64,000 nt of DNA from positions 14,942,001 through 15,006,000 of the forward strand of contig CP075494.1 of NCBI GenBank assembly GCA_021613535.1. Reading direction: 5' to 3'. The translations under genes were made by a program, and so were the position numbers. Source of the stretch: Adineta vaga (taxonomy: Eukaryota; Animalia; Rotifera). The notes beneath the pieces are model-generated. The model had not been told where the DNA came from. It searched no databases and saw only the letters and a program-made list of their open reading frames with translations. Shown piece by piece: positions 730-60,525 of this stretch; positions within the stretch are counted from its first letter, which is position 1; every line of letters starts with the position of its first letter.

Positions 730-1219
730 ATGGCATTTACATTCGTAGCATTTGCTTATATTGTAGCACTTATACTAACAGCATTGCTTATCTTTTTCGC
801 AATTTGGCATGTAAGACTTAATTTAGTTTTTGTTTTTTCTCACTCTTGATTTTATCTTTTCATAGATTATTGCCTTTGATGAATTAAAAAATGATCATAA
901 AAATCCTATTGAACAATGTAATGCATTAAATCCACTTGTTTTACCTGAATATATCATACATATTTTTATCAATATTCTTTTTCTTCTTGGTGGTCAATGG
1001 TTAACATTAGTTTTCAATGCACCATTAATTGCTTATCATATCAATAAATTTCGTACACGTTCAATGAAAAGTGGATTTGGTATTTATGATCCAACGACGA
1101 TAATGAATGCTCATATATTGAGTTTAGCACAACGTGAAGGATGGATCAAACTTGGTTTCTATATGATTACATTCTTCTATTATCTCTATTCTATGATTGC
1201 TGAACTTATTCGGGAATAA
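730..1219 (+). CDS. CNIH: Cornichon homolog (ER cargo receptor), 2 exons (730-810, 866-1219)
   Basis: Manual translation MAFTFVAFAYIVALILTALLIFFAIWH|IIAFDELKNDHKNPIEQCNALNPLVLPEY...YDPTTIMNA...EGWIKLGFYMITFFYYLYSMI matches the cornichon family; GT-AG intron 811-865. Absent from the ORF track. Confidence 0.95.
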
Positions 1220-1561: not shown

Positions 1562-1885
1562 ATGGATGCAACTGATCAACGATTTCGTACTCTTCTTATC
1601 AATGTTGGTAATAGATTATCGATGAAAGATCGACAATCTCTTGGTTTTATTCTTGGTGGTGATGTACCACGTCAAGATCTTGATACGATTGCTCGCGATA
1701 GTCATGCATCGATGAATATTATTTGGGACGCCTTAATTCAACGAGATAAAATTAATTTTCATAATGTTGATTATCTCATACGTTGTTTCGAAAGTATTGG
1801 TCGTATGGATATAGTTCGATTATTAAAAGAATATTTACAAGAACCTGCTGAACCAACAGCTCTATTCAGACAATTCAATCCATAA
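1562..1885 (+). CDS. Stand-alone death effector domain (DED) protein, 107 aa
   Basis: FRTLLINVGNRLSMKDRQSLGFILGGDVP...DALIQRDKINFHNVDYLIRCFESIGRMDIVRLL follows the DED pattern, including a C-terminal RxD(L/I) motif. It aligns by eye with the N-termini of the two downstream helicases. Confidence 0.85.
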   Translation: MDATDQRFRTLLINVGNRLSMKDRQSLGFILGGDVPRQDLDTIARDSHASMNIIWDALIQRDKINFHNVDYLIRCFESIGRMDIVRLLKEYLQEPAEPTALFRQFNP

Positions 1886-2032: not shown

Positions 2033-5000
2033 ATGCCATCGGATCGTGGTTTTCGTAGTTTATTACTCGAAATTGAAGATGAATTGTCCGATTCAGAACG
2101 CAAAAGATTTGTATTTCTACTTAGTAATGATATTCCACGAAAAATAAGAGATGGACCACTCGTTGATGTTTTTACAGTATTAATCGATCGTGGACATATA
2201 TCAGAAACAGATTGTAGTTACCTGTTGAATATATTCGAAGATATGAAATTATTAGCAGTAGCATACAAAATAGCTCAATTTCAATCTCGTAAATGATTCT
2301 TTTCTATTAATGAAATCTTATTTGTTTTTTTATTTCAAAAGAAAATTCTACTGCTCCTCTTACACAACCAATTTTGGAAAATTTTCAACGAATAGAAAAT
2401 ATTTCATTACCAGAAGATAATAATTCATTAGCTTTGGAAGTTATCAATGATTTTTTTAATAACACTGATTCAATGTTATTAATACCTGGTAAGAAAACAA
2501 AAGCAATTCTATAATATAAAAAAAAGGTTATATTATTGTTATAGATTCAGAGTCAAATAGTCCTACAGATACACCAATTCTTAATGAACCTTCACCGGAG
2601 ATTATTTCTTTATCAGTTGAGAATATTGATTTGAATACATTTGAACGTGAGACATGGTCAGATGAATTTTTGCAGAAGATCAACGTTAGTAATATTCGAC
2701 CGTATGAATATCAACGTGAATTGGTACAGAGTGCAATTCAAGCAAGAAATACTATCATATGTCTTCGAACGGGTGGTAAAAAAACATTTGTTGCTGGTAA
2801 TATATCATTTTCTCTGTATTCAAACAGATGAATTGAAGTCTTTTTTAGGTTTATTATTAAAATATTACCTAATTAAAAACAAGACATCTAAGAATGAAAA
2901 GAAATTCTTGGCATTTTTTATTGTACCACATCGTGCTATGTTAAAACAACAGATGCACAAATTAAAACAAATTGGAAATCTTCGAGTTGCTGTCTGTGAT
3001 GAGACAAATGAAGCTATACAATATGTTCATACTTCTGATGTTATTGTTTGTACACCCCGAAAACTTCTCTAGTATAATCTTTCTTTATTAATTTATTTGC
3101 AAAAGAAAAGTTTTTATTTTGCAGTTGTTTACGATTCAGAACAATCTTTTTAACCAATATTGATGTACTCTGTTTTGATGAGTGTGATGATAATGTCATA
3201 CGTAATCAATATATCGAAATTATGCAATATCTTTTATGTAAAAATATTGATCAGATTCCATCAGTTGAATCTTCACCGATTATCATTGGATTAACAGCGA
3301 TTGGTAAGATCTTTGTAGTGTATCTTAAACGATAAGTCGTCATCTTTTTGAATTGTAGGTGTTCGTCATATGAATTCATCGCAAATCATTCAAAATCTGG
3401 CAAATCTCTGTGCAACATTTAATTGTTTGACTATAACTACTGTTTCCAAGAAGGAAAATGAAGAAGAACTTGAACGATGTGTAACTCGTATATCTGAAGA
3501 TGAAATTATTTGTGTTGAAAAACAGAAAGAATATGAAGCATTGAAATTATCGATTGAAAAAGATCTGAAAGATTTAATTTTACAATTATTTATTAATAAA
3601 AATACAAATCCTTTGCAAATTTTTCCCGAAAAAGATATGAATACGAATGGTTATGAACAAAATCTTATATTAATCAAAGAATCAGAACAAAAAAAGCAAC
3701 ATTTTCCAGCTGTACTTTTATTAGATTATAGTCTTGTGATATATCGTCATTTACAAGCATTGATGATCTTAACACCACAAATGGTTCTCTCGGATTTGAA
3801 AGATCAATTTGAAACGATATATAAAAGTCGAGAACATCCAACACAAATTGATACGTCGATTTATGATAAATGTCACAGTGTATTTAAGAAGAAATTAGCA
3901 GAAATTCAAGAATCAGAACAGATTTTAAAGAGTCCAAAATTGGAGAAGCTTGTGGAATTATTGAAATCACATGCAGAAAAGCCAAATAGTCGAGGTAATT
4001 ATTATACATTTAATCCAATGCTTTGTTGAGAAGATTAATTTATCATCATTACAGTATTGATCTTGGTGGAACGAACATTTTATACGAAGAAAATTTGTGA
4101 TTTTTTACAAAATCATTCTGATTTAAAAGTTTGTTTATCCTTCATATTCTTTTCTCATATTATTCTATCATAAATATAGAATATCATCAAACCATGTTGT
4201 CTTGTTGGTCATACTGGTTCCATTGCTCGACAAGTGAACAGAAATCAATCAACAACACTCGAAGGATTTCAAACTGGTTTGTTTGTTCAACTATTTATAG
4301 TAAAGAATCTTTTCAGATCATTTTTAGGTGTTTATAATGTCATGATTGCGACTGATGTTATACAAGCAGGATTAAATATTCCTCAATGTTCATTAGTAGT
4401 TCGATATGATGTATGTGAATTTGTAGACAAAAGAATTTCATTGATATAACGAATCATTTTTTTTTTGTAGTTTGTTCCAGATAATCTTGGAACTGTTCAA
4501 GCACGTATTCGCGCACGTGCAGTAGATTGTCGTTACTGTCTTATTACTACTAAAGGTAATAGACTTCTTCGATCATCTATACGAGAAGAGTGATATGTTG
4601 TTTAGATTCTGCAAATTATAACAAAGAAAAAGATAGTCGTCAATATGAACGTGATTTAAGTGAAGTTCTTGAAACATGGAAAGGAATTTCACTGGATGAA
4701 TTTCAACATCGAGTTCAAAAAGTTCAAGTAAATCTTCTTGTTTTTCTCTACATTTGATTACAATGAATTTCTTCGTAGGAATCTCTAGTCTCCGAATGGA
4801 ATAATAATTTACAAAGAATCGCAATGTTACAAAAAAGTAGTACGAAAACAACTGAACTAACAGGTGATGTTCTATGTGGAGCTTGTGATTTTGTTCTTGG
4901 ACCACTTTCACAACTTCGTCGACATGGAGATGCTTATTTTCTCAACAATCGTGATTTCTATAATTGTGTTGAAGAGAAATTATTTGCTAAACCAGAAGTA

Positions 5001-5365
5001 TATACGAAAAGTACAACTACTGGTAATTCGTTTCTTATTGCTACGATCTTTTACTGAATTATTTATTGTTTATATTTTGTAAAGGTAAAGCTCATTGCGG
5101 AAGTAAAAAATGTCGAGTTAAACTTGGTAATATTCAAATCTTACGTGATTATCCTGAATTAAGTCCAGTTTATCCATTGAAATGTGAAGCAATAAAAATA
5201 AAATATATCGAAAAGACTAGTGGAAAGGAAGAGATTATTATGAAGAAGAAATGGTCAAAAATGCCGTTTAATATTCCACATCTTATTGAAGAATCATCTC
5301 CACACGATGATGACAATACTGACATTTTTTATGATGCTTGTGATATTTTTCCCAGTGACGTATAG
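2033..5365 (+). CDS. DED-RLR-1: DED + RIG-I-like SF2 helicase with degenerate motifs + Zn-binding C-terminal domain; multi-exon
   Basis: DED exon 2033-2288 splices in frame (GT 2289, AG 2341) through a linker into RPYEYQRE, ICLRTGGKKT, FIVP, VCTP, FDECD, IIGLTA, SPKLEKL, IATDVIQAGLNIPQC and QARIRAR. CTD cysteine pairs are CGAC and CGSKKC, followed by KKKWSKMPF. Confidence 0.88.
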
Positions 5366-5753: not shown

Positions 5754-8731
5754 ATGAGTGAAGATTTCGATTTTCGTGTCGTTCTAGTCAAGATTCAAAA
5801 CTCATTGTCAATTGAAGATCGTAGAAAGTTACATTTCCTGTTTGGTGAAGACATTCCACGTGTTTTACAGGAAGAAACTTCAATAGGAAGTGCTCTTGAT
5901 GTATTACAAAAACTCTTCGATAGCTTGAAGATTTCTTCAAAAAACGTTGCTTATCTAGTTCGTGCATTAGAAGCGATACAAAGACATGACTGTGCTCAAC
6001 GTTTATTAGGTACAATGCGATTATAAACTTAATATAAACTAACTAAGACATCGTTCTTTTAGACTATGACAAACTTGTACCCAAAGAGATTCGACAATTT
6101 ACACCTTTAGAAGAAGAACAGAATTCAATTAGAACAATTGTTACATCGCGATTACCGACTGAAGAGGAAGTACTGCAAGATTTAGAAGATGTTGATACAA
6201 TCTGTCTTCCAGGTAGAATTCGTATTCTTTACTAATTTTGTTCGATATTTATCTCTTTCTAGCTGAGGCAAAAAGTACTCCATCGATTCGTTTTGCTCCA
6301 CCTGAACCAGATCCAATGGATTTTGCAAGTATTGATTTACGACCATTTGAAGATTCTTCATATGAATGGACTACCGATTATTCGCAAACTCTTGGTTTAA
6401 ATGAACATCCTCGAAATTATCAAATCGAAATCATACGAGATGCAATTCGTCATAAACAAACTATTGTCTGTCTTCGAACTGGTTCGGGCAAAACATTCAT
6501 TGCATCTGTTTTAATCAAATATTATTTCATTAAAAAACAAAAAGAACAACCAAATTCAACGTTTTTAGCTTTATTCTTCGTACCACGTAAAGCTATTCGA
6601 TTACAACAAGCAAAAGCTGTTTCCGAGATTGGAAATCTACGAGTTCAATTATGTGACGATGATCAAACAATTGATCAATTAATGCAAACCAATCATGTTA
6701 TTGTTGCAACACCACAAAAATTCGTTAATTGTTTAAATAAAGAAACTATGCGTTTATCACAATTGGATATGATCATTTTTGATGAATGTCATAACACATC
6801 CGGTGGAAATCCGTATTGTGAAATAATGAAATATTATTTATGTCCATTAAGAAAACAGAATACATCAGAAAGACCATTGATTATTGGTTTAACCGCAACA
6901 GTTAGTGCGAAAGATGCAGTTGAAAAGAAGGAAACAATTGAAAAAAATTTAGTTACCATATGTAGTAAATTGGCATGTCGAACGATTTCGACTGTTTGTG
7001 ATCAAAAAAATATTGACGAGATTAATGCAAAGATCAGTCGACCGAGCAATGATCAATTTGAATTTGTAAAAGAAGTTATATACAATTCCTATTTTGAAGA
7101 ATATTCGAAAATGTTTAAAGATCTTATTGAACAAATCAAACAGCATTTAGATGGTCGAGAATTATTAGATGAACAAGAAATAGGTTCATCTAGTTTTATT
7201 GGACAATTAATTTTATTAAAACGAACGTTTGAAACAAAAGATGACATTAATAATATTATTATCTGCGATTATTTATTATTATTAACAAAGAAATATTCAG
7301 CACTCAAAGATTTACCATTTGATATGGTAATTAAACATGTAATGCTTAAAATTGATGAATATCATCAAGGATATCAACGACCCGTTCCAATGGATAATAT
7401 ACTCTATGAACGATGTGGAACAGAATTGAATATGATTTTAGAAAAGTATGCAGAACATGCTGCAACAAATCCCAAATTAGATTGTTTAGTTGAACTTTTA
7501 AAACGACATGCTTCTCAGTCTACCAAAGGTACATCACTTTTTTGGTAATAATGTGTCTTTCTACAATTAATTATAGGACTTATTTTGGTTAAAACAACAT
7601 TTTATGCAAAAACTATCTATGACTACTTATCTAATCATCCTGAATTAATAGTAAATAGATATTGATGTATTTAATGAGTTTATAAATGAAGATTATTTTT
7701 CAGAATTTTGTTAAACCAGCATGGATTGTCGGGCAAAATAGTGCAGATCATGCATTGACAATACACGATCAAGAAACGAAATTAAAAGAATTTTGTGGAG
7801 GTTCGTTTTCATTTATTTCTCTTCTTATTTATCTATTGATTTGTAGTTGAACGTAATGTACTAATTGCTACGGGTAAATGATACATTATCTGTGATTATT
7901 TCGAATCGACAACGAGATTTCTTTAGATATTGTTCAGGAAGGGTTAAATATACCGACATGTTCGTATGTCATTCGATATGAATTTGTTTCGGATGAGATT
8001 GGAACGATTCAATCACGTGGACGAGCACGTGCAAAGAATAGTTCATATTATCTCATCACTGAACACGATTCTATCAATCATCATCGAGAAAAAAACAATA
8101 AGATTCGTGAAGATAATATGGAAGCAGCTATAGCAGCATGGCCAAATCTTAACAAAGATCAATTTCATCATGATGTTGAAAGTCATACTGTAAGTAATAT
8201 GTTCTAATAGAAGACAACCTAATCGATTTGCTTTTGTAGAAGACATTGATCAAAGGATGGGAAGACGCTTTACGAAGTGAAGAACAACAGAGAAATATAT
8301 TGAGATCAGTTGGTAAAAAAGAAGGTTCCATACACTGTCGACGATGTGGTAGACTTTTAGGTCAACTCGCATGGTTGAAGAAACGGAATACGACGTATTT
8401 TATTAATAATCCAGAATTTTTTACGACGAATGATTGTAGACTTGATAAAACATTCACAAGTTTTCAAGAAAATTTAGTGATGGGTAAATATTTCTCTTCA
8501 TGTTGATTATGATTCATCTTTGTTTGAAAAATTCTAGGAGATGTGAAATGTACTTGTGGTAATTCACTTGGTGGTTGTCTGAAATTTATGGATCGTTCAG
8601 AATTAGGTCCACTATGTGCATTAAAATGTAAACAAATCAAGTTTAAAATTAATGATCAACCAGCTATGATCGAATTTGGACAATGGAGCAAAAACGATCG
8701 TTTCGATGTCGAAGAACTTCAAGAAATTTAA
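5754..8731 (+). CDS. DED-RLR-2: DED + intact RIG-I/MDA5-like DECH helicase + Zn-binding C-terminal domain; multi-exon
   Basis: DED exon 5754-6009, linker exon, then PRNYQIE, CLRTGSGKT (6478-6495), VATPQ, FDECH (6781-6792), IIGLTAT, NPKLDCL, IATDIVQEGLNIPTC and QSRGRAR (8010-8030). CTD has CRRC...CTCG and FGQWS. Confidence 0.93.
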
Positions 8732-9189
8732 ATTAGTTTTGAGTTTATTTTAATAACTTTTTTTACGACAAAAAAATGAGTTATTTTTCTATTCTTAATC
8801 TTTTTTCCATGACATCCAGAAAATCGACATGAAAAATTTGTAAGAGACAGTCCACGAGAATATCGAGCATTCGCCAACATGACCATACTCTCACATTTTT
8901 TACTCCCCTTTTTTTCGATTGCATGTTAAAGAGCATCATCACAAACTACTAAATCCAAATTTTTAGCTCATTTGAGCTTATACTCGAAGAGTTATGAGGT
9001 ACACACTGAACACATACTCATGAAAAACTCGAAATTTTCATGTTTTTAATAGGTATTTAGTTTTTTAAATTTTTCTTCGCTATATTCTGATCCAATATAC
9101 AAAAATCATATACCATTTTGTAGAGCAGGTTTTGCTCTACAAAACTCCCTGTATGACTTCTCTCCAAACCTTAAAAGTATAGTAGTTTT

Positions 9190-9324
9190 AGGGTGTGGGT
9201 GTGGGTGTGGGTGGGTGAAGGTGATGTTTGTGTGTGGACGCGTGAGTATGTGGGTGTGAGTGGATGTGGGTGAGGATGAGAGGATGTGTATAAGAGAAAA
9301 CACCCACATTCACACACACACCCT
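9190..9324. repeat. TGTGGG/CCCACA-rich repeat with imperfect inverted ends
   Basis: agggtgtgggtgtgggtgtgggtggg at the left and cacccacattcacacacacaccct at the right; related sequence at 55246-55300. Confidence 0.7.
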
Positions 9325-10420
9325 TGTTATTCTTCAACCTCAATTTTATCAGGTAAGAATAAATGACTTGAAATTATCAATATCATTTTCATTTTTTTTT
9401 ATAGATTTGTTCAAGTTTATTTGTTTCAGATGAATTGAGAAGAAGTTTAACATCTGGACTTGTTTCTGATCTCTCTTCTTATTCACAAAGAGATTATCGT
9501 CGTTTTCTTCTGGCTCATTTACAATTTCTTCAAGGACTTTGTGAAATTTCAATTGAATTGATTAGTAATTTTGTTAATCAATTTCATTCTTCGTTATTCA
9601 TTACAACTCAACTTTTATCTCAAATGAATTTTCGTCAACGTCTTAATTCTACAATTGAACAAAGTAAATCAAATCCTCAACAAATCTTTTATTCTCTTCT
9701 TCTGTTAATTCGTAAAATCAATCACAGAAATGGTTTAATATCTACTTATGGAACAAATTATGAATATATTATTTCATGGGATGAATTACATAAAGTTTAT
9801 GTCCCTAGGCAACCCATAATTTATGAAAATTGTTCTTGTGATTTAAACTTAAATTGTACAAGTCAAGCAAATTTTTTGTAAACAGTTCTTTAGAAAAACT
9901 TTCAATTGAAAGATTAAAAATCGGATGTACACCAAGTGAATCATTTCTTTCTTCAACTCTTCAATATTTTTATAATCAATCTTTATTGAAGTGAACTTTA
10001 AATGAACTTGTAAATAATTTCTTTACTGAACAATGAAAAATAACAATTAATTATTTATCTTATTTTGAACATTGTAAACCATCTCATTGTTCTTATACAT
10101 ATATTCAAAATTTTGATGTACTTTATATATTAACTCTTCTTCTTGCTCTTCAAGGTGGTTTAAGTATTATTCTCAAATGGATTTCTCTTAATTTAATACA
10201 AATTATTAATAAAATTTATCGTTATCGAAAAAGACAAACAAATATTGTTCAATCAACTTCGTCGAATCAGATGACATTCATTGCACTATGCTATTACAAC
10301 TGTCAATAATCCTGTTGTAAATTCAGAACCAATTCGAAAAAATATATTTTGGAAATTGTCATCATATTTATATTATTGATATTTGTTATAATATCTCTCG
10401 TTTTGTTTTCGATCTATTTA
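9325..10420 (+). pseudogene. 5'-truncated, disrupted fragment of a Cys-containing membrane protein gene
   Basis: Reads QPQFYQ|ICSSLFVS...YGTNYEY...CSCDLNLNC...GCTPSESFLSSTL...YFEHCKPSHCSYTY...LLALQGGLSIILKWI with an intron at ~9352-9403, stops/frameshifts and no start codon. Confidence 0.65.
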
Positions 10421-10677: not shown

Positions 10678-11957
10678 CTATGTCTGAAAATGAGCTAATG
10701 CTTTTACCATCAATGATCCGGATGGAACAAGACCTAGAATATATGAATATTAGTATTTAAGAGAAAGAAAGATGTTCGTCATCTTTTTACCAAGTTCATT
10801 CAATGTCTTATGATTATCATTTTCATTGAAATCTTTCTTGGGATAATTTTGTGCAAGAATAAATGGACGAGATTGTTGTGTTTCACGTATCCATTCCGTA
10901 ACTTTTTCAAATCGATCATTTGTTTTAAATGTGTGTCGAACCATTGAACCATCCGGTAAACGAACTTGTAAATTACATTCATCATATTGTCGTGTTGGTT
11001 GAGGTGCAACGACGTGTTGAGGTTTAGGTGCAGGAACATCTCCAATAATTCCTCCATTTTTTTCTGCTGCAGCTCTTTCTTTTCGAGCACGTTTATCAGC
11101 TTCAATTTGTTCAATCGCACGTTGTTTAGCTAATTGTGTTTCGAGTTTTTCACGACGATTAGCTTCTGCAATCTTTTTCATTTCGTCTTCATCACGTCTG
11201 TGAAAAACCAAACATTTCTAACAAGAATCTACCGACAAGAATTTCATACTTTTGTTTCAATTCCAAAAGAGCTTTTCCATCAGTAATGCGTTTCTTTTCC
11301 ATTTCAAGAGCTTTTTGTTCATCAGCTAATTTCTGTTCTTGACGTCGAGCAACAATACGTTCTTGAAGTCTATTTGATAAAAACAAATAAGATCATTATT
11401 TTCGATGATTTTTCAACTAACTTTTTTTTCATTTCTTCTTTTTCTTCAGCTGTTAATGGTTTAACCGCTTCTGTACATTCTGAGAAGCTTGAGTGATTCG
11501 TTCGTAAAGCATGAGCAGTAGCCATATCTGCATCTTTCAATAATTTACCACATCTGAACGAAAGTTATAGATATACAACGAGTAAAACATCTTTTCTCTC
11601 TTTACTCATCACATTTGAGAGAATTCACGTCGCCATGTGATTCAGCTGTTGTTGTTGCTGCACTAGCAGCACTGGAACTTAAATTGAGTGTTGGTTCAGA
11701 ACTAGCTGCACTTCCTGATGCTATTTCACTTTCGTGCGCAGTAATCCTAGATGTACAAACAATCATATTTATCAATAAATATCAACAATGAACTGTACCA
11801 GTCAATCGCTTGTTCCAAAGTTTCTGCTTTACCCTTATTAATTGCGCTATCACTATAATAGAGAAAAAGAAATAATTCAATCGAAGTAAAACTCAATGAA
11901 AACATACATCTGAGGTTTTTCAAACCCCATTTCAACAAGTTGTTCGGCGAGTGACAT
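10678..11957 (-). CDS. UBXN1: UBX domain-containing protein 1 (UBA + C2H2 finger + coiled coil + UBX)
   Basis: MSLAEQLVEMGF (UBA), CDECGK...HALRTNH, coiled coil, YDECNLQVRLPDGS...NYPKK...TLNELGLVPSG (UBX). Confidence 0.88.
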
Positions 11958-43106: not shown

Positions 43107-43363
43107 TTTTACCATACAGGTTTTCTGCGATTCTATTTCTTTAATAAAATATAAATTTATTGAGCGACTGTACTTTCTTTTGGATATAATGATTGAATTC
43201 GATGCAATAGAAATATAATAGTGACATCTATTTGCCTAAGAAATAATTGGTTTAAAAGATTGTGTCCTATGCATTTGTCGTGATTCTATCATCGAGCTCA
43301 TTAGTCATTTGCTCTCAAAAGCATGTACATACAGGTTTATTTCAATTGATTATTTTTTTTTAG

Positions 43364-45707
43364 ATGACTACAATCAACGATTCATCACCAATAACTAACG
43401 AATCTAATCAGTCCGATACTTCGATCGGCAAATCACCTGAACAGAGTTCAGTTCTTGTTGTTGGTGCAGGTGGCATTGGATGTGAATTATTAAAATCATT
43501 AGCTCTTTGTCGATTTCGTTCCATTGGTGTCATTGATCTTGATACAATCGAAGTTTCAAATCTCAATCGACAATTTCTCTTTCGTCGTGAACATGTTGGT
43601 CAAGCAAAGGCAACAGTTGCATGTGATAGTATTCGTCGTCTTTGTCCATCGATACAAATCGAACCATTTCATGGTGATGTTATTACTGATCCACGATTTG
43701 ATATTTCATTCTATAAACAATATGATCTTGTTATCAATGCATTAGATAATGTTCAAGCACGACAGCATGTCAATCGAATGTGTTTGTTATGTTCAAAACC
43801 TTTGATTGATAGTGGATCAACAGGTTACAATGGACAAGCAACATTAATATTCAAAGGTCGAACACAATGTTATGATTGTATTGAAAAACCAAAACAACAA
43901 CGAACTTATGCTGTTTGTACTATTCGTAATACACCATCACAACCAATTCATTGTATTGTTTGGGCAAAGTTTCTCTATAATCAATTCTTTGGTGATAACG
44001 ATGATCCAAATAATGAAGATGTCACACCTGATGCTGATGATCCGGAAAATGATGCTAATCCACAACAAGAACAACAGCAGCAGCAAGAAAATGGTCATCA
44101 TCGAATCTCAACACGTGATTGGATTCAAGGTGAAATGGACGAATTTCAGCCGATTCGAGTGTTCAATAAACTATTCTATGATGATATCAACTATTTAACA
44201 ACAATGAAAAATCTATGGGAAAAACGAAGACAACCGATTGCTCTTCAATATGAACAAGCATGTCAAATACAAGAAAAAATCACTTCAAATGGTCAAACTA
44301 ATCATGAACAATCAGTGATGCCAAAGTTAAATGATCAACGAATTCAATCGATTCATGAATATGTTCAAATGTTTATTGATAGTTTACATGAATTAAAACA
44401 ACGTTCAGATAAACAACGACAAATAGGTAAGTGAATTTCGATGAGGAACTTGTTGAAAGATGATTTATGTTTAGCTTCGACAAGTAAAGAACCAACATTT
44501 CTTGTTTGGGATAAAAATGATGATGCCGATCTTCGATTTGTGACAGCATCAGCAAATCTACGTGCATATATCTTTGGTATTAATCTCACAAGTAAATTTG
44601 ATGTCAAATCAATGGCTGGAAACATCATTCCAGCTGTAGCAACAACCAATGCCATTGTTGCTGGTATCACTGTACTTCAAGCACGAAAGATTCTTTCAAG
44701 TTTACCTCGATCATCAACAGATCATACATTAACATCAATCAAACATTTAACTAATGTTTTCATTTCAACTGATCGTAAAACAGGAGCAATAATTCAATCG
44801 ATTCCATTGGAAGAACCGAATTCATCATGTATACAATGTAGTGATCTTGAACAACCAGTTCGTGTTCGAATCAATATGTCTTTGTTTACATTGTATTCAT
44901 TGTATGAACGTTTGATTCGTAAACATCTGAAAATGAACAAACCAGATGTGATTATTGCTGATGGTAGTGGAAGAATTTTGATATCTGCAGATGATGATGA
45001 AGAAGATGAAAATATGATGGTGAAAACACTTGATCAATTTAAATTAATGAATGGTACAATTCTACTTTGTGAAGAAGAATATGATGATAAAACAAATGAA
45101 GCTTTGATACAACATATGAAAATCAAATTAATGCTTGAACATACAGATACAATAACAGATAAAGATGAATATATTATTGTTGATGATCAAGTTATTGGAG
45201 AAATCAAACAAATTAAACAAACATTAAAACGAAAATATGCTGATGATGATGATGATGATGATGATGACAATATTCAACATTTAGATGATTATCAAAATGA
45301 AATGAATATTGTTAAAAAAACGAAAAAATTATCAACATCTCATGATGAACATAATAATGGTCCAATGCATACGAGTTTTGTTATGCTTGTGGATGATCAA
45401 GCACCAACACAAACAAATGGACATCATCGAAATACAGTAGAAAATGATCTTAAAATCAACGTAAAAAAGCAGATACAAAATCAAAACGGTAAATCAGATC
45501 ATTCGTTTGAAGAAGAAATATTTGAAAAGAATTATTTTTATTCTAGACAATTATACTTCAAATGATAGCAACAGTTGTGTGATATTAGATGATGATAGTG
45601 AAACAAATAACAAACCGGTTAATAATACAAACATAGGTGAGAATATTGTCAATCCTGCTGATGATGATGATGACGACTGTTATTGTGTTGAAATCACCGA
45701 TTCATGA
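43364..45707 (+). CDS. UBA2: SUMO-activating enzyme subunit 2, copy A (long acidic C-terminus)
   Basis: VVGAGGIGCELLK, DLDTIEVSNLNRQFLF, NALDN..AR, catalytic CTIRNTP..PIHCIVWAK, WDKND, KSMAGNIIPAVATTNAIVAG. Introns at ~44427-44474 and ~45491-45547. Confidence 0.93.
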
Positions 45708-58066: not shown

Positions 58067-58584
58067 AAACAGAATACTTTTCAACATCTTAAATCTACTG
58101 AACTCCTTTTTTCACACTTACATATGCTTATGAACACTTGTTTTGTCAGTTTTCGTAAGAGTGTTGTATTATCTGACATGTATCAATATTCAGCTTTTAA
58201 TAAATATTTCTGCATCAATATAATAACCTTTTAGCTTCGAAAAAAGTACAATAAAATACATATTTTCATTTATCGAGGAGTTCTTTGCCGGCGACGTCCA
58301 TCAGGAATATCATCTATTTCTACATGCTTTTCTATTGTATCTTGATCAGTTTCCTATTCATTTAATAGAATGTAGATTTATTGACCAAATATCGGTTCCT
58401 CTGAATAAGAACTAGTTTGGTACAAATGTAATATATGAGTGACATCTTTTTCTGAAGAAAACAATCGGTTCGGATCGGTTCGATTCGAACAGTTCTATCT
58501 TATACATTTTCGTTCTCGTTCGTCGGATTTTCCCGAAAAATGAGTGTACGTATAAATTTATTTCATTTCACTAAATTATTTTAG

Positions 58585-60525
58585 ATGGTTGCAATCAACG
58601 ATTCATCACCAATAACTAACGAATCTAATCAGTCCGATACTTCGATCGGTAAATCACCTGAACAAAGTTCAGTTCTTGTTGTCGGTGCAGGTGGCATTGG
58701 ATGTGAATTATTAAAATCATTAGCTCTTTGTCGATTTCGTTCCATTGGTGTCATTGATCTTGATACAATCGAAGTTTCAAATCTCAATCGACAATTTCTC
58801 TTTCGTCGTGAACATGTTGGTCAAGCAAAAGCAACAGTTGCATGTGATAGTATTCGTCGTCTTTGTCCATCAATACAGATCGAACCATTTCATGGTGATG
58901 TTATTACTGATCCACGATTTGATATTTCATTCTATAAACAATATGATCTTGTTATCAATGCATTAGATAATGTTCAAGCACGACAACATGTCAATCGAAT
59001 GTGTTTGTTATGTTCAAAACCTTTGATTGATAGTGGTTCTACTGGTTACAATGGACAAGCAACGTTAATATTCAAAGGTCGAACACAATGTTATGATTGT
59101 ATTGAAAAACCGAAACAACAACGAACTTATGCTGTTTGTACTATTCGTAATACACCATCACAACCAATTCATTGTATTGTTTGGGCAAAGTTTCTCTATA
59201 ATCAATTCTTTGGTGATAATGATGATCCAAATAATGAAGATGTCACACCTGATGCTGATGATCCGGAAAATGATGCTAATCCACAACAACAACAACAACA
59301 GCAGCAGCAAGAAAATGGTCATCATCGAATCTCAACACGTGATTGGATTCAAGGTGAGATGGACGAATTTCAACCGATTCGAGTCTTCAATAAACTATTC
59401 TATGATGATATCAACTATTTAACAACAATGAAAAATCTATGGGAAAAACGAAGACAACCGATTGCTCTTCAATATGAACAAGCATGTCAAATACAAGAAA
59501 AAATCATTGCAAATGGTCAAACTAATCATGAACAATCAGTGATGCCAAAGTTAAATGATCAACGAATTCAATCGATTCGTGAATATGTTCAAATGTTTAT
59601 TGATAGTTTACATGAATTAAAACAACGTTCAGATAAACAACGACAAATAGGTAAGTGAATTTCGATGAGGAACTTGTTGAAAGATGATTTATGTTTAGCT
59701 TCGACGAGTAAAGAAGCAACATTTCTTGTTTGGGATAAAAATGATGATGCCGATCTTCGATTTGTGACAGCATCAGCAAATCTACGTGCATATATCTTTG
59801 GTATTAATCTCACAAGTAAATTTGATGTCAAATCAATGGCTGGAAACATCATTCCAGCTGTAGCAACAACAAATGCCATTGTTGCTGGTATCACTGTTCT
59901 TCAAGCACGAAAGATTCTTTCAAGTTTACCTCGATCATCAACAGATCATACATTAACATCAATCAAACATTTAACTAATGTTTTTATTTCAACTGATCGT
60001 AAAACAGGAGCAATAATTCAGTCGATTCCATTGGAAGAACCGAATTCATCATGTATTCAATGTAGTGATCTTGAACAACCAGTTCGTGTTCGAATCAACA
60101 TGTCTTTGTTTACATTATATTCATTGTATGAACGTTTGATTCGTAAACATCTGAAAATGAACAAACCAGATGTGATTATTGCTGATGGTAGTGGAAGAAT
60201 TTTGATATCTGCAGATGATGATGAAGAAGATGAAAATATGATGGTGAAAACACTTGATCAATTTAAATTAATGAATGGTACAATTCTACTTTGTGAAGAA
60301 GAATATGATGATAAAACAAATGAAGCTTTGATACAACATATGAAAATCAAATTAATGCTTGAACATACAGATACAATAACAGATAAAGATGAATATATTA
60401 TTGTTGATGATCAAGTTATTGGAGAAATCAAACAAGTCAAGCAGTCAATTAAGCGAAAATACATGGAAGAAGTGGATGATGTCAGTATAGAATATTTTCC
60501 AGTCAAAAGAATAATGGATAAGTGA
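58585..60525 (+). CDS. UBA2: SUMO-activating enzyme subunit 2, copy B (short C-terminus)
   Basis: Near-identical to copy A up to ...IGEIKQ, then a distinct 30-aa tail ending PVKRIMDK*. Confidence 0.92.

What the first reader, a model, noticed from the sequence alone, without database searches (positions are those of the whole stretch)
2769..4518. DED-RLR-1 looks like a maintained pseudo-ATPase paired with an active paralog
Seen, RLR-1 vs RLR-2: Walker A TGGKKT vs TGSGKT, motif II DECD vs DECH, motif V IQAG vs VQEG, motif VI QARIRAR vs QSRGRAR. The spliced frame appears open throughout and the CTD Zn cysteines are retained. Established: these motifs form the ATP site in RLRs. Inference: four changes concentrated on ATP-site motifs in an intact gene point to a catalytically impaired RNA-binding or scaffold partner, analogous to cFLIP/caspase-8 or paired immune receptors, and not to decay.
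Basis: partly seen in the sequence, partly recalled or inferred. Interest (0 to 1): 0.8.

Follow-up and report, generated by a model that had tools for sequence, protein, structure and literature searches.

The report
Rotifer RNA sensor with eroded ATPase
A bdelloid rotifer carries, next to a normal RIG-I-like viral-RNA sensor gene, an intact and selectively maintained sister gene whose ATP-burning site has been altered since early bdelloid evolution and is damaged further in this genome, so it probably clamps RNA and signals or scaffolds without normal ATP turnover.

Summary
RLR-1 (13 exons, 2033-5365, 892 aa, all introns GT-AG, no internal stop) reads TGGKKT, DECD, IQAG and QARIRAR. The adjacent RLR-2 (5754-8731) reads TGSGKT, DECH, VQEG and QSRGRAR.

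- **Old changes.** Motif V Glu->Ala (RIG-I E702) and motif VI first Gly->Val/Leu/Ile (RIG-I G729) are shared by all derived-bdelloid RLR-1 orthologs with data (motif V is Thr in one). Motif III has also lost its Ser/Thr in most.
- **Canonical outgroup.** The Didymodactylos carnosus ortholog has every motif in canonical form.
- **Private changes.** Walker A Gly->Lys and DECH->DECD occur only in this genome. All 17 other orthologous sequences keep GKT.
- **Scattered hits.** Other lineages have their own catalytic-site changes (DECQ, DDCH, DECA, Arg->Lys). About 30 RLR-2 orthologs have none.

RLR-1 is nevertheless under purifying selection (omega 0.15-0.42). It is not accelerated in this lineage and stays in tandem with RLR-2 in eight contigs.

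The Walker lysine, motif II Asp and nearly all arginine fingers are conserved. The clade is therefore better described as an ATP-binding, hydrolysis-uncoupled sensor than as a dead pseudo-ATPase. Human RIG-I E702A signals constitutively. No biochemistry or expression data exist.

The parts
2033..5365 (+). DED-RLR-1 gene: 13 exons, 892 aa. Domain order is DED, linker, Hel1, Hel2i, Hel2, pincer, Zn-CTD.
   Evidence: Exon and phase check found all introns GT-AG and one terminal stop. Pfam finds DED, DEAD and Helicase_C on single exons. RIG-I is the best PDB hit.
2033..2288 (+). RLR-1 exon 1, the death effector domain.
   Evidence: Pfam PF01335 scores 49 bits against a cut-off of 35.9. Omega is 0.31-0.66 in unsaturated pairs.
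2700..2714 (+). Q motif PYEYQ. Tyr replaces RIG-I R244 and Gln247 is kept.
   Evidence: The Tyr is shared by the whole RLR-1 lineage, including the canonical D. carnosus ortholog.
2769..2786 (+). Motif I (Walker A) TGGKKT. Gly->Lys falls at the RIG-I G269 position. The codons are GGT GGT AAA AAA.
   Evidence: Ungapped alignment to RIG-I TGCGKT. All 17 other orthologous sequences keep G-x-GKT.
3052..3060 (+). Motif Ic TPR, where the canonical form is TPQ.
   Evidence: Arg is shared with L015. Other RLR-1 lineages have His or Lys. RLR-2 orthologs have TPQ, with Lys in 2 of 27.
3177..3188 (+). Motif II DECD (His->Asp, CAT->GAT).
   Evidence: The closest relative L007 and L015 have DECH. L003 has DECQ, L005 has DDCH and L012 has DECA.
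3294..3302 (+). Motif III TAI, with the Ser/Thr lost.
   Evidence: RLR-1 orthologs have I, V, A or E at this position. Only L002 (T) and D. carnosus (S) keep a hydroxyl residue. RLR-2 is always T or S.
3359..3994 (+). Exon 6, the Hel2i insertion domain.
   Evidence: A profile of 11 orthologs hits only the RIG-I Hel2i region, colinear over positions 4-198, with E = 0.011.
4195..4218 (+). Motif IVa region CCLVGHTG. The conserved Trp and Gln-Asn are replaced in this genome only.
   Evidence: DNA and protein alignments.
4348..4377 (+). Motif V ATDVIQAGLN. Ala falls at the RIG-I E702 position.
   Evidence: ungapped, query residues 2-27 against RIG-I 691-716. It is Ala in all derived RLR-1 orthologs with data, and Thr in L012.
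4498..4518 (+). Motif VI QARIRAR. Ile falls at the first glycine, RIG-I G729. The arginines are kept.
   Evidence: It is Val, Leu or Ile in all derived RLR-1 orthologs, and Gly in D. carnosus.
4875..5113 (+). CTD zinc ligands: CxxC at 4875-4886 and CxxxxC at 5096-5113, across an intron.
   Evidence: The cysteines are invariant in 7 orthologs. hhalign gives 97.6% probability against a Rotaria RLR CTD that passes Pfam RIG-I_C-RD.
5754..8731 (+). DED-RLR-2 gene: 9 exons, 856 aa, all helicase motifs canonical. It lies 388 nt downstream of RLR-1 on the same strand.
   Evidence: About 30 orthologs all carry GKT, DECH and TA[ST].
1562..1885 (+). DED-only ORF (107 aa) directly upstream. It is probably a separate gene of the same cluster.
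   Evidence: Pfam DED 42.6 bits. It has its own ATG and stop, with no donor before the stop. It is annotated separately in Rotaria magnacalcarata and is present in L002, L005, L006 and L015.

Best explanation
RLR-1 is the bdelloid-rotifer ortholog of an ancient DED-bearing RIG-I-like receptor, and its motor site was remodelled once. This happened on the stem of the bdelloids other than Didymodactylos. Motif V Glu became Ala (RIG-I E702A), the first glycine of motif VI became Val/Leu/Ile (G729), and the motif III hydroxyl residue was subsequently lost in most lineages (L002 still has Thr).

**Shown.**
- The gene has since been kept intact under purifying selection.
- It stays in tandem with a strictly canonical RLR-2.
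- It keeps the RNA-contact threonines, the zinc CTD, its DED, the Walker lysine, the motif II aspartate and, in all but one lineage, the arginine fingers.
- It tolerates scattered hits on residues needed for turnover in separate lineages.

**Inferred.**
- In most bdelloids the protein still binds ATP and dsRNA, but hydrolysis is slow or uncoupled from translocation and release.
- It would therefore dwell on RNA instead of proofreading it.
- It would use its DED to nucleate or modulate a DED assembly, possibly with the upstream DED-only protein and with RLR-2.
- In this genome, two further private changes (P-loop Gly->Lys at G269 and DECH->DECD) probably push it to weak or no nucleotide binding. 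That would make it an RNA-binding scaffold.
- Whether it activates or dampens signalling cannot be read from sequence.
For: - **Gene integrity.**
- **Family identity.**
- **Orthologs and synteny.** DED-only, RLR-1 and RLR-2, or RLR-1 with RLR-2, lie together in eight independent contigs (window, L002, L003/L004, L005, L009, L012, L013 and a JGI contig).
- **Clade-wide motif states.** Motif V, VI and III states are shared across the clade, while motif I and II changes are private.
- **Canonical outgroup.** D. carnosus P0075 groups with the RLR-1 clade (SH-aLRT 99). It is canonical on genomic DNA.
- **Rarity.** Among 102 family representatives, motif V has Glu in 97, Gln in 3 and Ala in 2. Motif VI has Gly in 101 and Val in 1. 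The Val and one of the two Ala cases are an RLR-1 fragment.
- **Purifying selection.** Omega is 0.23-0.34 in unsaturated pairs and 0.15 for window against L007.
- **No acceleration in the window lineage.**
- **ATP-site columns.** They are intermediate: 9 of 21 variable against 72% background (p = 0.006) and 2 of 21 in RLR-2.
- **Literature.** RIG-I E702A alone causes constitutive signalling. P-loop C268F is catalytically dead with reduced ATP binding and yet signals (PMC6086658). Motif VI G731R is ATPase-deficient, binds RNA tightly and is dominant negative, while G731A and G731L are gain of function (PMC12976907).
Against: - No ATPase, RNA-binding, interaction or expression data exist for any bdelloid RLR.
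- DExD is a normal helicase box.
- The effect of a beta-branched residue at G729 has not been measured in any RLR I could find.
- The conservation of K270, D372 and the arginines could equally mean that the clade is simply an active ATPase with odd motifs.
- The Walker A change rests on one assembly.
- The other homoeologous or allelic copies of this degenerate-tetraploid genome were not available.
- Orthology of P0075 rests on a tree of the Hel2i exon only, and its contig shows no tandem RLR-2.
- NG86 estimates in a 30% GC genome are rough.
Confidence: 0.55

Rival explanations
1. RLR-1 is an ordinary, fully active dsRNA-dependent ATPase and sensor. On this view the odd motif residues are tolerated family-specific variants with no functional meaning.
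For: The Walker Lys/Thr, motif II Asp-Glu, Gln726 and all three arginines are conserved in nearly every ortholog. ATP-site columns are more conserved than background. DExD boxes are functional in other SF2 helicases (own knowledge). Purifying selection is similar to that on RLR-2.
Against: - G729 is Gly in 101 of 102 family representatives and E702 is Glu in 97 of 102.
- E702A changes RIG-I behaviour (PMC6086658).
- Repeated independent hits occur in RLR-1 only: DDCH on the catalytic Glu, DECQ, DECA, DECD, Arg->Lys, and G269K. About 30 RLR-2 orthologs have none.
- A Lys in place of the P-loop Gly is hard to reconcile with normal nucleotide binding.
Confidence: 0.17
2. RLR-1 is a cFLIP-like or dominant-negative decoy. 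It would bind the same RNA or the same DED partners as RLR-2 and restrain its signalling.
For: The tandem pairing with canonical RLR-2 is conserved. RIG-I G731R shows that a motif VI change can give an RNA-binding, ATPase-deficient dominant negative (PMC12976907). RLR-1's DED evolves faster than RLR-2's.
Against: The substitution actually shared by the clade, E702A, is gain of function in RIG-I, not inhibitory (PMC6086658). The Hel2i tree places the two genes as old paralogs and not as a recent enzyme and pseudo-enzyme duplicate pair. There is no evidence of heteromerisation.
Confidence: 0.18
3. The copy in this window is a recently disabled gene on its way to becoming a pseudogene. An intact homoeolog elsewhere in the degenerate-tetraploid genome would cover for it.
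For: Private hits occur on motifs I, Ic, II and the IVa region in this genome only. Bdelloid genes usually have further copies (own knowledge).
Against: The 892-codon frame is open and all 12 introns have intact splice sites. There is no rate acceleration against L007 or L015 or against RLR-2. Omega for window against L007 is 0.15.
Confidence: 0.07
4. The Walker A Lys is an assembly or base-calling error next to an A run. The true sequence would be GGN AAA.
For: It is unique among 18 orthologous sequences. It lies at the start of a run of seven A.
Against: It needs two substitutions with no length change. The same gene carries other private non-homopolymer changes, such as CAT->GAT in motif II.
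Confidence: 0.03

Closest known systems
Human RIG-I with ATPase-site variants: E702A, the Singleton-Merten variants C268F and E373A, and G731R (PMC6086658, PMC12976907)
   Same: Same family and the same positions. The RLR-1 clade carries Ala at E702. The window copy has a bulky residue in the P-loop next to C268. Motif VI is altered between the arginine fingers. These mutants show that RNA binding and signalling can survive loss of ATP turnover.
   Different: Those are single engineered or disease mutations in a CARD-bearing vertebrate protein. Here the changes are fixed, combined, maintained across many bdelloid species, and sit at G729 instead of G731. Their effect is unmeasured.
DED-bearing RLRs of lophotrochozoans, for example Lingula anatina LanRLR8 (PMC8998645)
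   Same: The architecture is an N-terminal death effector domain instead of CARDs on a helicase plus RD core, in a spiralian lineage.
   Different: That study did not sample rotifers, and its text says nothing about altered ATPase motifs. Relatedness to the bdelloid genes was not tested here.
LGP2 (DHX58), the regulatory RLR
   Same: It is an RLR paralog that modulates the signalling of other RLRs on shared RNA.
   Different: LGP2 lacks a death-fold domain and keeps canonical motifs. RLR-1 keeps a DED and has non-canonical motifs.
Dicer helicase domains that lost motor activity: vertebrate Dicer, and C. elegans DCR-1 working with DRH-1 (PMC12146746, PMC11095941)
   Same: This is the same helicase clade. 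There is natural evolutionary loss or weakening of ATP-dependent function while the domain is retained. Two related helicases work together, with one doing most of the hydrolysis.
   Different: There the motif sequences stay largely canonical, and the partner is a nuclease complex and not a death-fold signalling assembly.
cFLIP with caspase-8 (own knowledge)
   Same: A DED protein with a disabled catalytic site is encoded next to its active relative.
   Different: The enzyme class is different. The bdelloid pair appears to be old paralogs, and no heterodimer evidence exists.

Membership tests
RIG-I-like receptors (RLR) | SF2 DExD/H helicase core with Hel1 and Hel2 | tested here: met
   Pfam DEAD and Helicase_C score above cut-off on single exons. 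The best PDB matches of exon peptides are RIG-I, MDA5, LGP2 and Dicer.
RIG-I-like receptors (RLR) | Hel2i insertion domain between Hel1 and Hel2 | tested here: met
   A profile of 11 orthologs of exon 6 hits only the RIG-I Hel2i region, colinear, at E = 0.011-0.07. The match is weak but specific.
RIG-I-like receptors (RLR) | Zinc-binding C-terminal RNA-recognition domain | tested here: met
   CxxC and CxxxxC are invariant in 7 orthologs. hhalign gives 97.6% probability against a Rotaria CTD that passes Pfam PF11648. The window exon alone scores below the Pfam cut-off (14.4 against 25.6 bits).
RIG-I-like receptors (RLR) | N-terminal death-fold signalling module (tandem CARDs in RIG-I and MDA5) | tested here: not met
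   RLR-1 has one DED (PF01335, 49 bits) and no CARD. This is a known variant architecture in spiralians (PMC8998645).
RIG-I-like receptors (RLR) | Canonical ATP-site motifs: I GxGKT, II DECH, III TAS, V EG, VI QxRGRxR | tested here: not met
   The window has GGKKT, DECD, TAI, AG and QARIRAR. RLR-2 and the D. carnosus ortholog meet this feature.
RIG-I-like receptors (RLR) | dsRNA-stimulated ATPase and RNA-triggered signalling | not testable with these tools
   This needs biochemistry and cell assays.
Pseudo-enzyme (pseudo-ATPase) | Loss of residues indispensable for catalysis | tested here: inconclusive
   The window has lost the P-loop Gly (G269K), the motif II His, the motif V Glu and the motif VI Gly. 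It keeps K270, T271, D372, E373, Q726 and R728/R730/R732.
Pseudo-enzyme (pseudo-ATPase) | Maintenance by purifying selection after the catalytic change | tested here: met
   Omega is 0.15-0.42 at p < 1e-5. There is no acceleration in the window lineage. The frame is open in the window and the orthologous exon matches of all loci except L006 are free of stop codons.
Pseudo-enzyme (pseudo-ATPase) | Absence of catalytic activity | not testable with these tools
   This needs an ATPase assay.
cFLIP-type paired pseudo-enzyme | Encoded beside the active paralog | tested here: met
   RLR-1 and RLR-2 lie in head-to-tail tandem in eight contigs.
cFLIP-type paired pseudo-enzyme | Heteromerises with the active paralog through DEDs | not testable with these tools
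   No interaction data exist. The joined protein was not folded.

The most novel reading that the evidence does not exclude
Bdelloid rotifers have fixed, and kept across the derived bdelloid lineages sampled here, a natural RIG-I E702A-type receptor that binds dsRNA without ATP-driven proofreading. They run it as an obligate partner of a canonical RLR-2 and a DED-only adaptor encoded in the same three-gene cluster. This would be an RLR equivalent of sensor/helper or enzyme/pseudo-enzyme pairs, feeding a DED (caspase-type) output instead of a CARD/MAVS output.
Probability: 0.2. Interest if true: 0.8.

Novelty: new variant of a known kind. Interest (0 to 1): 0.55.

Why it matters
In vertebrate RLRs, ATP hydrolysis is the proofreading step that keeps the sensor off self RNA. 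Mutations that slow it cause interferon disease or, in one case, dominant immunodeficiency.

A whole animal lineage has fixed one of these exact substitutions (E702A) together with a motif VI change. It has kept the gene under selection beside a canonical paralog. That makes it a natural experiment on what an RLR does without normal turnover, and on how an organism tolerates such a receptor.

The series needed to test this already exists in nature:
- the canonical Didymodactylos ortholog;
- the intermediate Rotaria and Adineta forms;
- the most eroded copy, in this window.

It also adds rotifers to the spiralian lineages with DED-coupled RLRs, which links RNA sensing to death-effector signalling outside vertebrates.

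Tried and rejected
- **PDB searches with single exons.** Exon 10 (motif VI, 28 aa) and the two CTD exons found nothing meaningful. Their identity was instead established through RLR-2 and RLR-3 alignments and hhalign.
- **Search for closer relatives.** The one metagenome scan returned only four loci at 67-69% identity, none closer than L007. Two contigs had no retrievable DNA.
- **Saturated comparisons.** dN/dS against L002 and L015 is unusable because synonymous sites are saturated or compositionally shifted (pS above 0.75; L015 is 53% GC). Only amino-acid rate tests were used for those loci.
- **Two-DED model rejected.** I first modelled RLR-1 with two DEDs. I dropped this because the first DED ORF ends in a stop with no donor before it.
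- **D705N rejected as a lesion.** It also occurs in RLR-2 and in sea-urchin RLRs.
- **Exon 8 burst partly rejected.** The cluster of changes in exon 8 (4180-4276) is partly shared with L015. Only Trp->Cys and Gln-Asn->His-Thr are private to this genome.
- **Enrichment test.** A four-taxon Fisher test on motif columns alone (7 of 20 against 2 of 20) is not significant. The wider sampling was needed.
- **Joined model left out.** All searches were exon by exon by reference, and substitution counts were summed over exons.
Full report
**Source and method.** The window is AT-rich (about 30% GC) eukaryotic DNA with 46-62 nt GT-AG introns. Its closest named relatives are bdelloid rotifers: Rotaria, Adineta and Didymodactylos. 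RLR-2 groups with Adineta ricciae (77% identity, SH-aLRT 92), so an Adineta-like species is likely. It is not human. The joined spliced protein was never assembled for a search, a fold or a tree. Substitution counts were made exon by exon and summed.

**Gene models.** RLR-1 is 13 exons, 2033-5365, 2679 coding nt and 892 aa. RLR-2 is 9 exons, 5754-8731 and 856 aa. Every intron is GT-AG and there is no internal stop. Four exon pairs have identical lengths in the two genes (256, 74, 97 and 244 nt). The DED ORF at 1562-1885 has its own ATG and stop, with no GT before the stop. It is annotated as a separate gene in Rotaria magnacalcarata. I therefore treat it as a DED-only gene, which makes this a three-gene cluster.

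**Observation.** The motif strings are exactly as reported.
- HMMER alignments to human RIG-I are ungapped. The first Lys of KKT falls on G269 and the second on K270.
- The Ala of IQAG falls on E702.
- RLR-2's motifs V and VI align to MDA5, and RLR-1 aligns to RLR-2 without gaps. The Ile of QARIRAR is therefore the first glycine. That is G729 by the numbering in PMC12976907, which places G731 between the two catalytic arginines.
- RLR-1 also has TAI for motif III and TPR for motif Ic.
- The Asn in GLNI is shared with RLR-2 and with echinoderm RLRs, so it is uninformative.

**Family.**
- Pfam finds a DED on exon 1 and DEAD and Helicase_C on helicase exons.
- PDB best hits are RIG-I.
- A profile of exon 6 orthologs hits only RIG-I Hel2i.
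- The last exon aligns at 97.6% hhalign probability to a Rotaria RLR CTD that passes Pfam RIG-I_C-RD. The CxxxxC pair is aligned, and all four cysteines are invariant in orthologs.
- DED-bearing RLRs are already described in lophotrochozoans (PMC8998645).

**Relatives.** Word searches with exon peptides, contig look-ups and one metagenome scan gave 15 loci. RLR-1 followed by RLR-2 is seen in eight independent contigs. The flanking cornichon and UBX genes are also syntenic.

**Motif states across RLR-1 orthologs**:

| Motif | Window | Other RLR-1 orthologs |
|---|---|---|
| V (E702 position) | Ala | Ala in all derived orthologs with data, Thr in L012 |
| VI (G729 position) | Ile | Val, Leu or Ile in all derived orthologs |
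| III (hydroxyl residue) | Ile | I, V, A or E; only L002 keeps Thr |
| I (Walker A) | GGKKT | G-x-GKT in all 17 other sequences, including the sister lineage L015 and Adineta steineri |
| II | DECD | DECH in L007, L015 and seven other loci; DECQ in L003 (and the near-identical L008); DDCH in L005; DECA in L012 |

L011 has Arg->Lys at the last arginine of motif VI. About 30 RLR-2 orthologs (44-77% identity) all show GKT, DECH and TA[ST]. The six RLR-2 sequences with Hel2 data show QEG and QSRGRAR. A third, DED-less paralog in Rotaria is also canonical.

**Polarity and age.** I used the exhaustive profile search once, because the breadth of the clade rests on absence of relatives.
- Only six representatives score better than 1e-30, so the clade is narrow.
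- One of them, P0075, is a 905-aa DED-RLR of Didymodactylos carnosus.
- In a Hel2i-exon tree it joins the RLR-1 clade (SH-aLRT 99). The 12 derived RLR-1 sequences form a clade (99) on a long stem.
- P0075 is canonical at every motif, and I checked this on its genomic DNA.
- The motif V and VI changes therefore arose on that stem, and motif III was lost afterwards in most lineages (L002 keeps Thr).
- Among 102 parsed family representatives, motif V has Glu in 97, Gln in 3 and Ala in 2. Motif VI has Gly in 101 and Val in 1. The only Val, and one of the two Ala, belong to an RLR-1 fragment.

**Selection.**
- Nei-Gojobori omega for the helicase-CTD of RLR-1 is 0.23-0.34 in unsaturated pairs (dS 0.12-0.37) and 0.15 for window against L007. 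For RLR-2 it is 0.22-0.30. All have Fisher p below 1e-5.
- Window-private residues at otherwise invariant sites relate to L002-private ones by 0.66 in RLR-1 and 0.69 in RLR-2.
- Amino-acid relative-rate tests show the window lineage is not faster than L007 (22 against 30) or L015 (38 against 79).
- The 21 ATP-site columns are variable in 9 cases in the RLR-1 clade, against 72% of background columns (p = 0.006) and 2 of 21 in RLR-2.
- The site is therefore partly relaxed but not free. K270, T271, D372, Q247, Q726, R728 and R730 never change.

**Mechanism (inference).** In RIG-I, ATP binding drives the signalling-competent closed state, and hydrolysis removes the protein from self RNA.
- E702A alone gives constitutive signalling. 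P-loop C268F is catalytically dead, binds ATP poorly and still signals on RNA (PMC6086658).
- Motif VI G731R is ATPase-deficient, binds RNA tightly and is dominant negative. G731A and G731L are gain of function (PMC12976907).
- The clade-wide pattern keeps the binding residues and alters the coupling residues. It fits an RNA- and ATP-binding receptor with slow or uncoupled turnover and a long dwell time.
- The window copy, with a Lys replacing the P-loop glycine, has probably lost most nucleotide affinity and acts as an RNA-bound DED scaffold.
- The sign of its effect on signalling is open.

**Rivals.**
- **Ordinary active ATPase.** Conserved core residues support this. The rarity of the substitutions and the RLR-1-only scatter of hits argue against it.
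- **cFLIP-like inhibitor of RLR-2.** This is compatible with the tandem arrangement, but nothing else supports it. The tree makes the two genes old paralogs.
- **Young pseudogene.** The open frame, the intact splice sites and the rate tests argue against it.
- **Assembly error at Walker A.** This would need two substitutions and cannot be excluded without reads.

**Limits.**
- There is no expression or biochemical evidence.
- The orthology tree uses one exon.
- L006's RLR-1 has a stop and a frameshifted stretch, but it comes from a 3x-coverage assembly.
- NG86 is approximate at this base composition.

Noticed in passing
window 1562-1885 (+): A DED-only ORF of 107 aa has its own ATG and stop and sits directly upstream of RLR-1. 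The same arrangement is seen in L001, L002, L005, L006 and L015, and a JGI contig shows two such ORFs. It keeps an RxD[LI]-like stretch that the RLR-1 DED lacks. It is a possible adaptor of the cluster.
   Followed up: partly
window 43324-45237 and 58545-60461 (+): A 1.9-kb segment is duplicated at 97% identity about 15 kb apart. Each copy carries ThiF plus UAE_UbL ORFs, which resemble a SUMO or ubiquitin-like activating enzyme subunit. The second ORF of the downstream copy is shorter (286 against 374 aa). More diverged repeats (74-82%) surround them.
   Followed up: partly
window 1064-1216 (+) and 10750-11211 (-): A cornichon exon and a UBX-domain gene flank the RLR cluster. The same neighbours occur in orthologous contigs (L002, L006 and a JGI contig), so synteny around the cluster is old.
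   Followed up: partly
window about 9100-9340: A simple CA/GT-type repeat downstream of RLR-2 reads as His-Pro-Thr runs in several frames.
   Followed up: no
L006:6763-7614: The RLR-1 ortholog in this contig has a stop in the motif II exon and a frameshifted stretch in Hel2i. The contig name gives 3x coverage, so this may be assembly error or a true pseudogene.
   Followed up: no
L001:8387-10115: Rotaria magnacalcarata has about 1.7 kb between the motif III exon and the Hel2i exon, where other species have a 50-60 nt intron. The public gene model is split there into separate genes.
   Followed up: no
L015 (whole locus) compared with the window: Orthologous loci differ widely in base composition. 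L015 is 53% GC, L012 is 40% and the window is 30%, although L015 is the sister of the window/L007 lineage in the Hel2i tree.
   Followed up: no
P0062-P0066 (Rotaria species): A third bdelloid RLR paralog is about 700 aa with no DED in the public models. It passes Pfam RIG-I_C-RD and all its motifs are canonical.
   Followed up: partly
L014:1556-9738: The D. carnosus RLR-1 ortholog spans 8.2 kb and has two introns of more than 2 kb. No RLR-2 lies within the 16-kb contig, so the tandem arrangement may post-date or have been lost in that lineage.
   Followed up: partly
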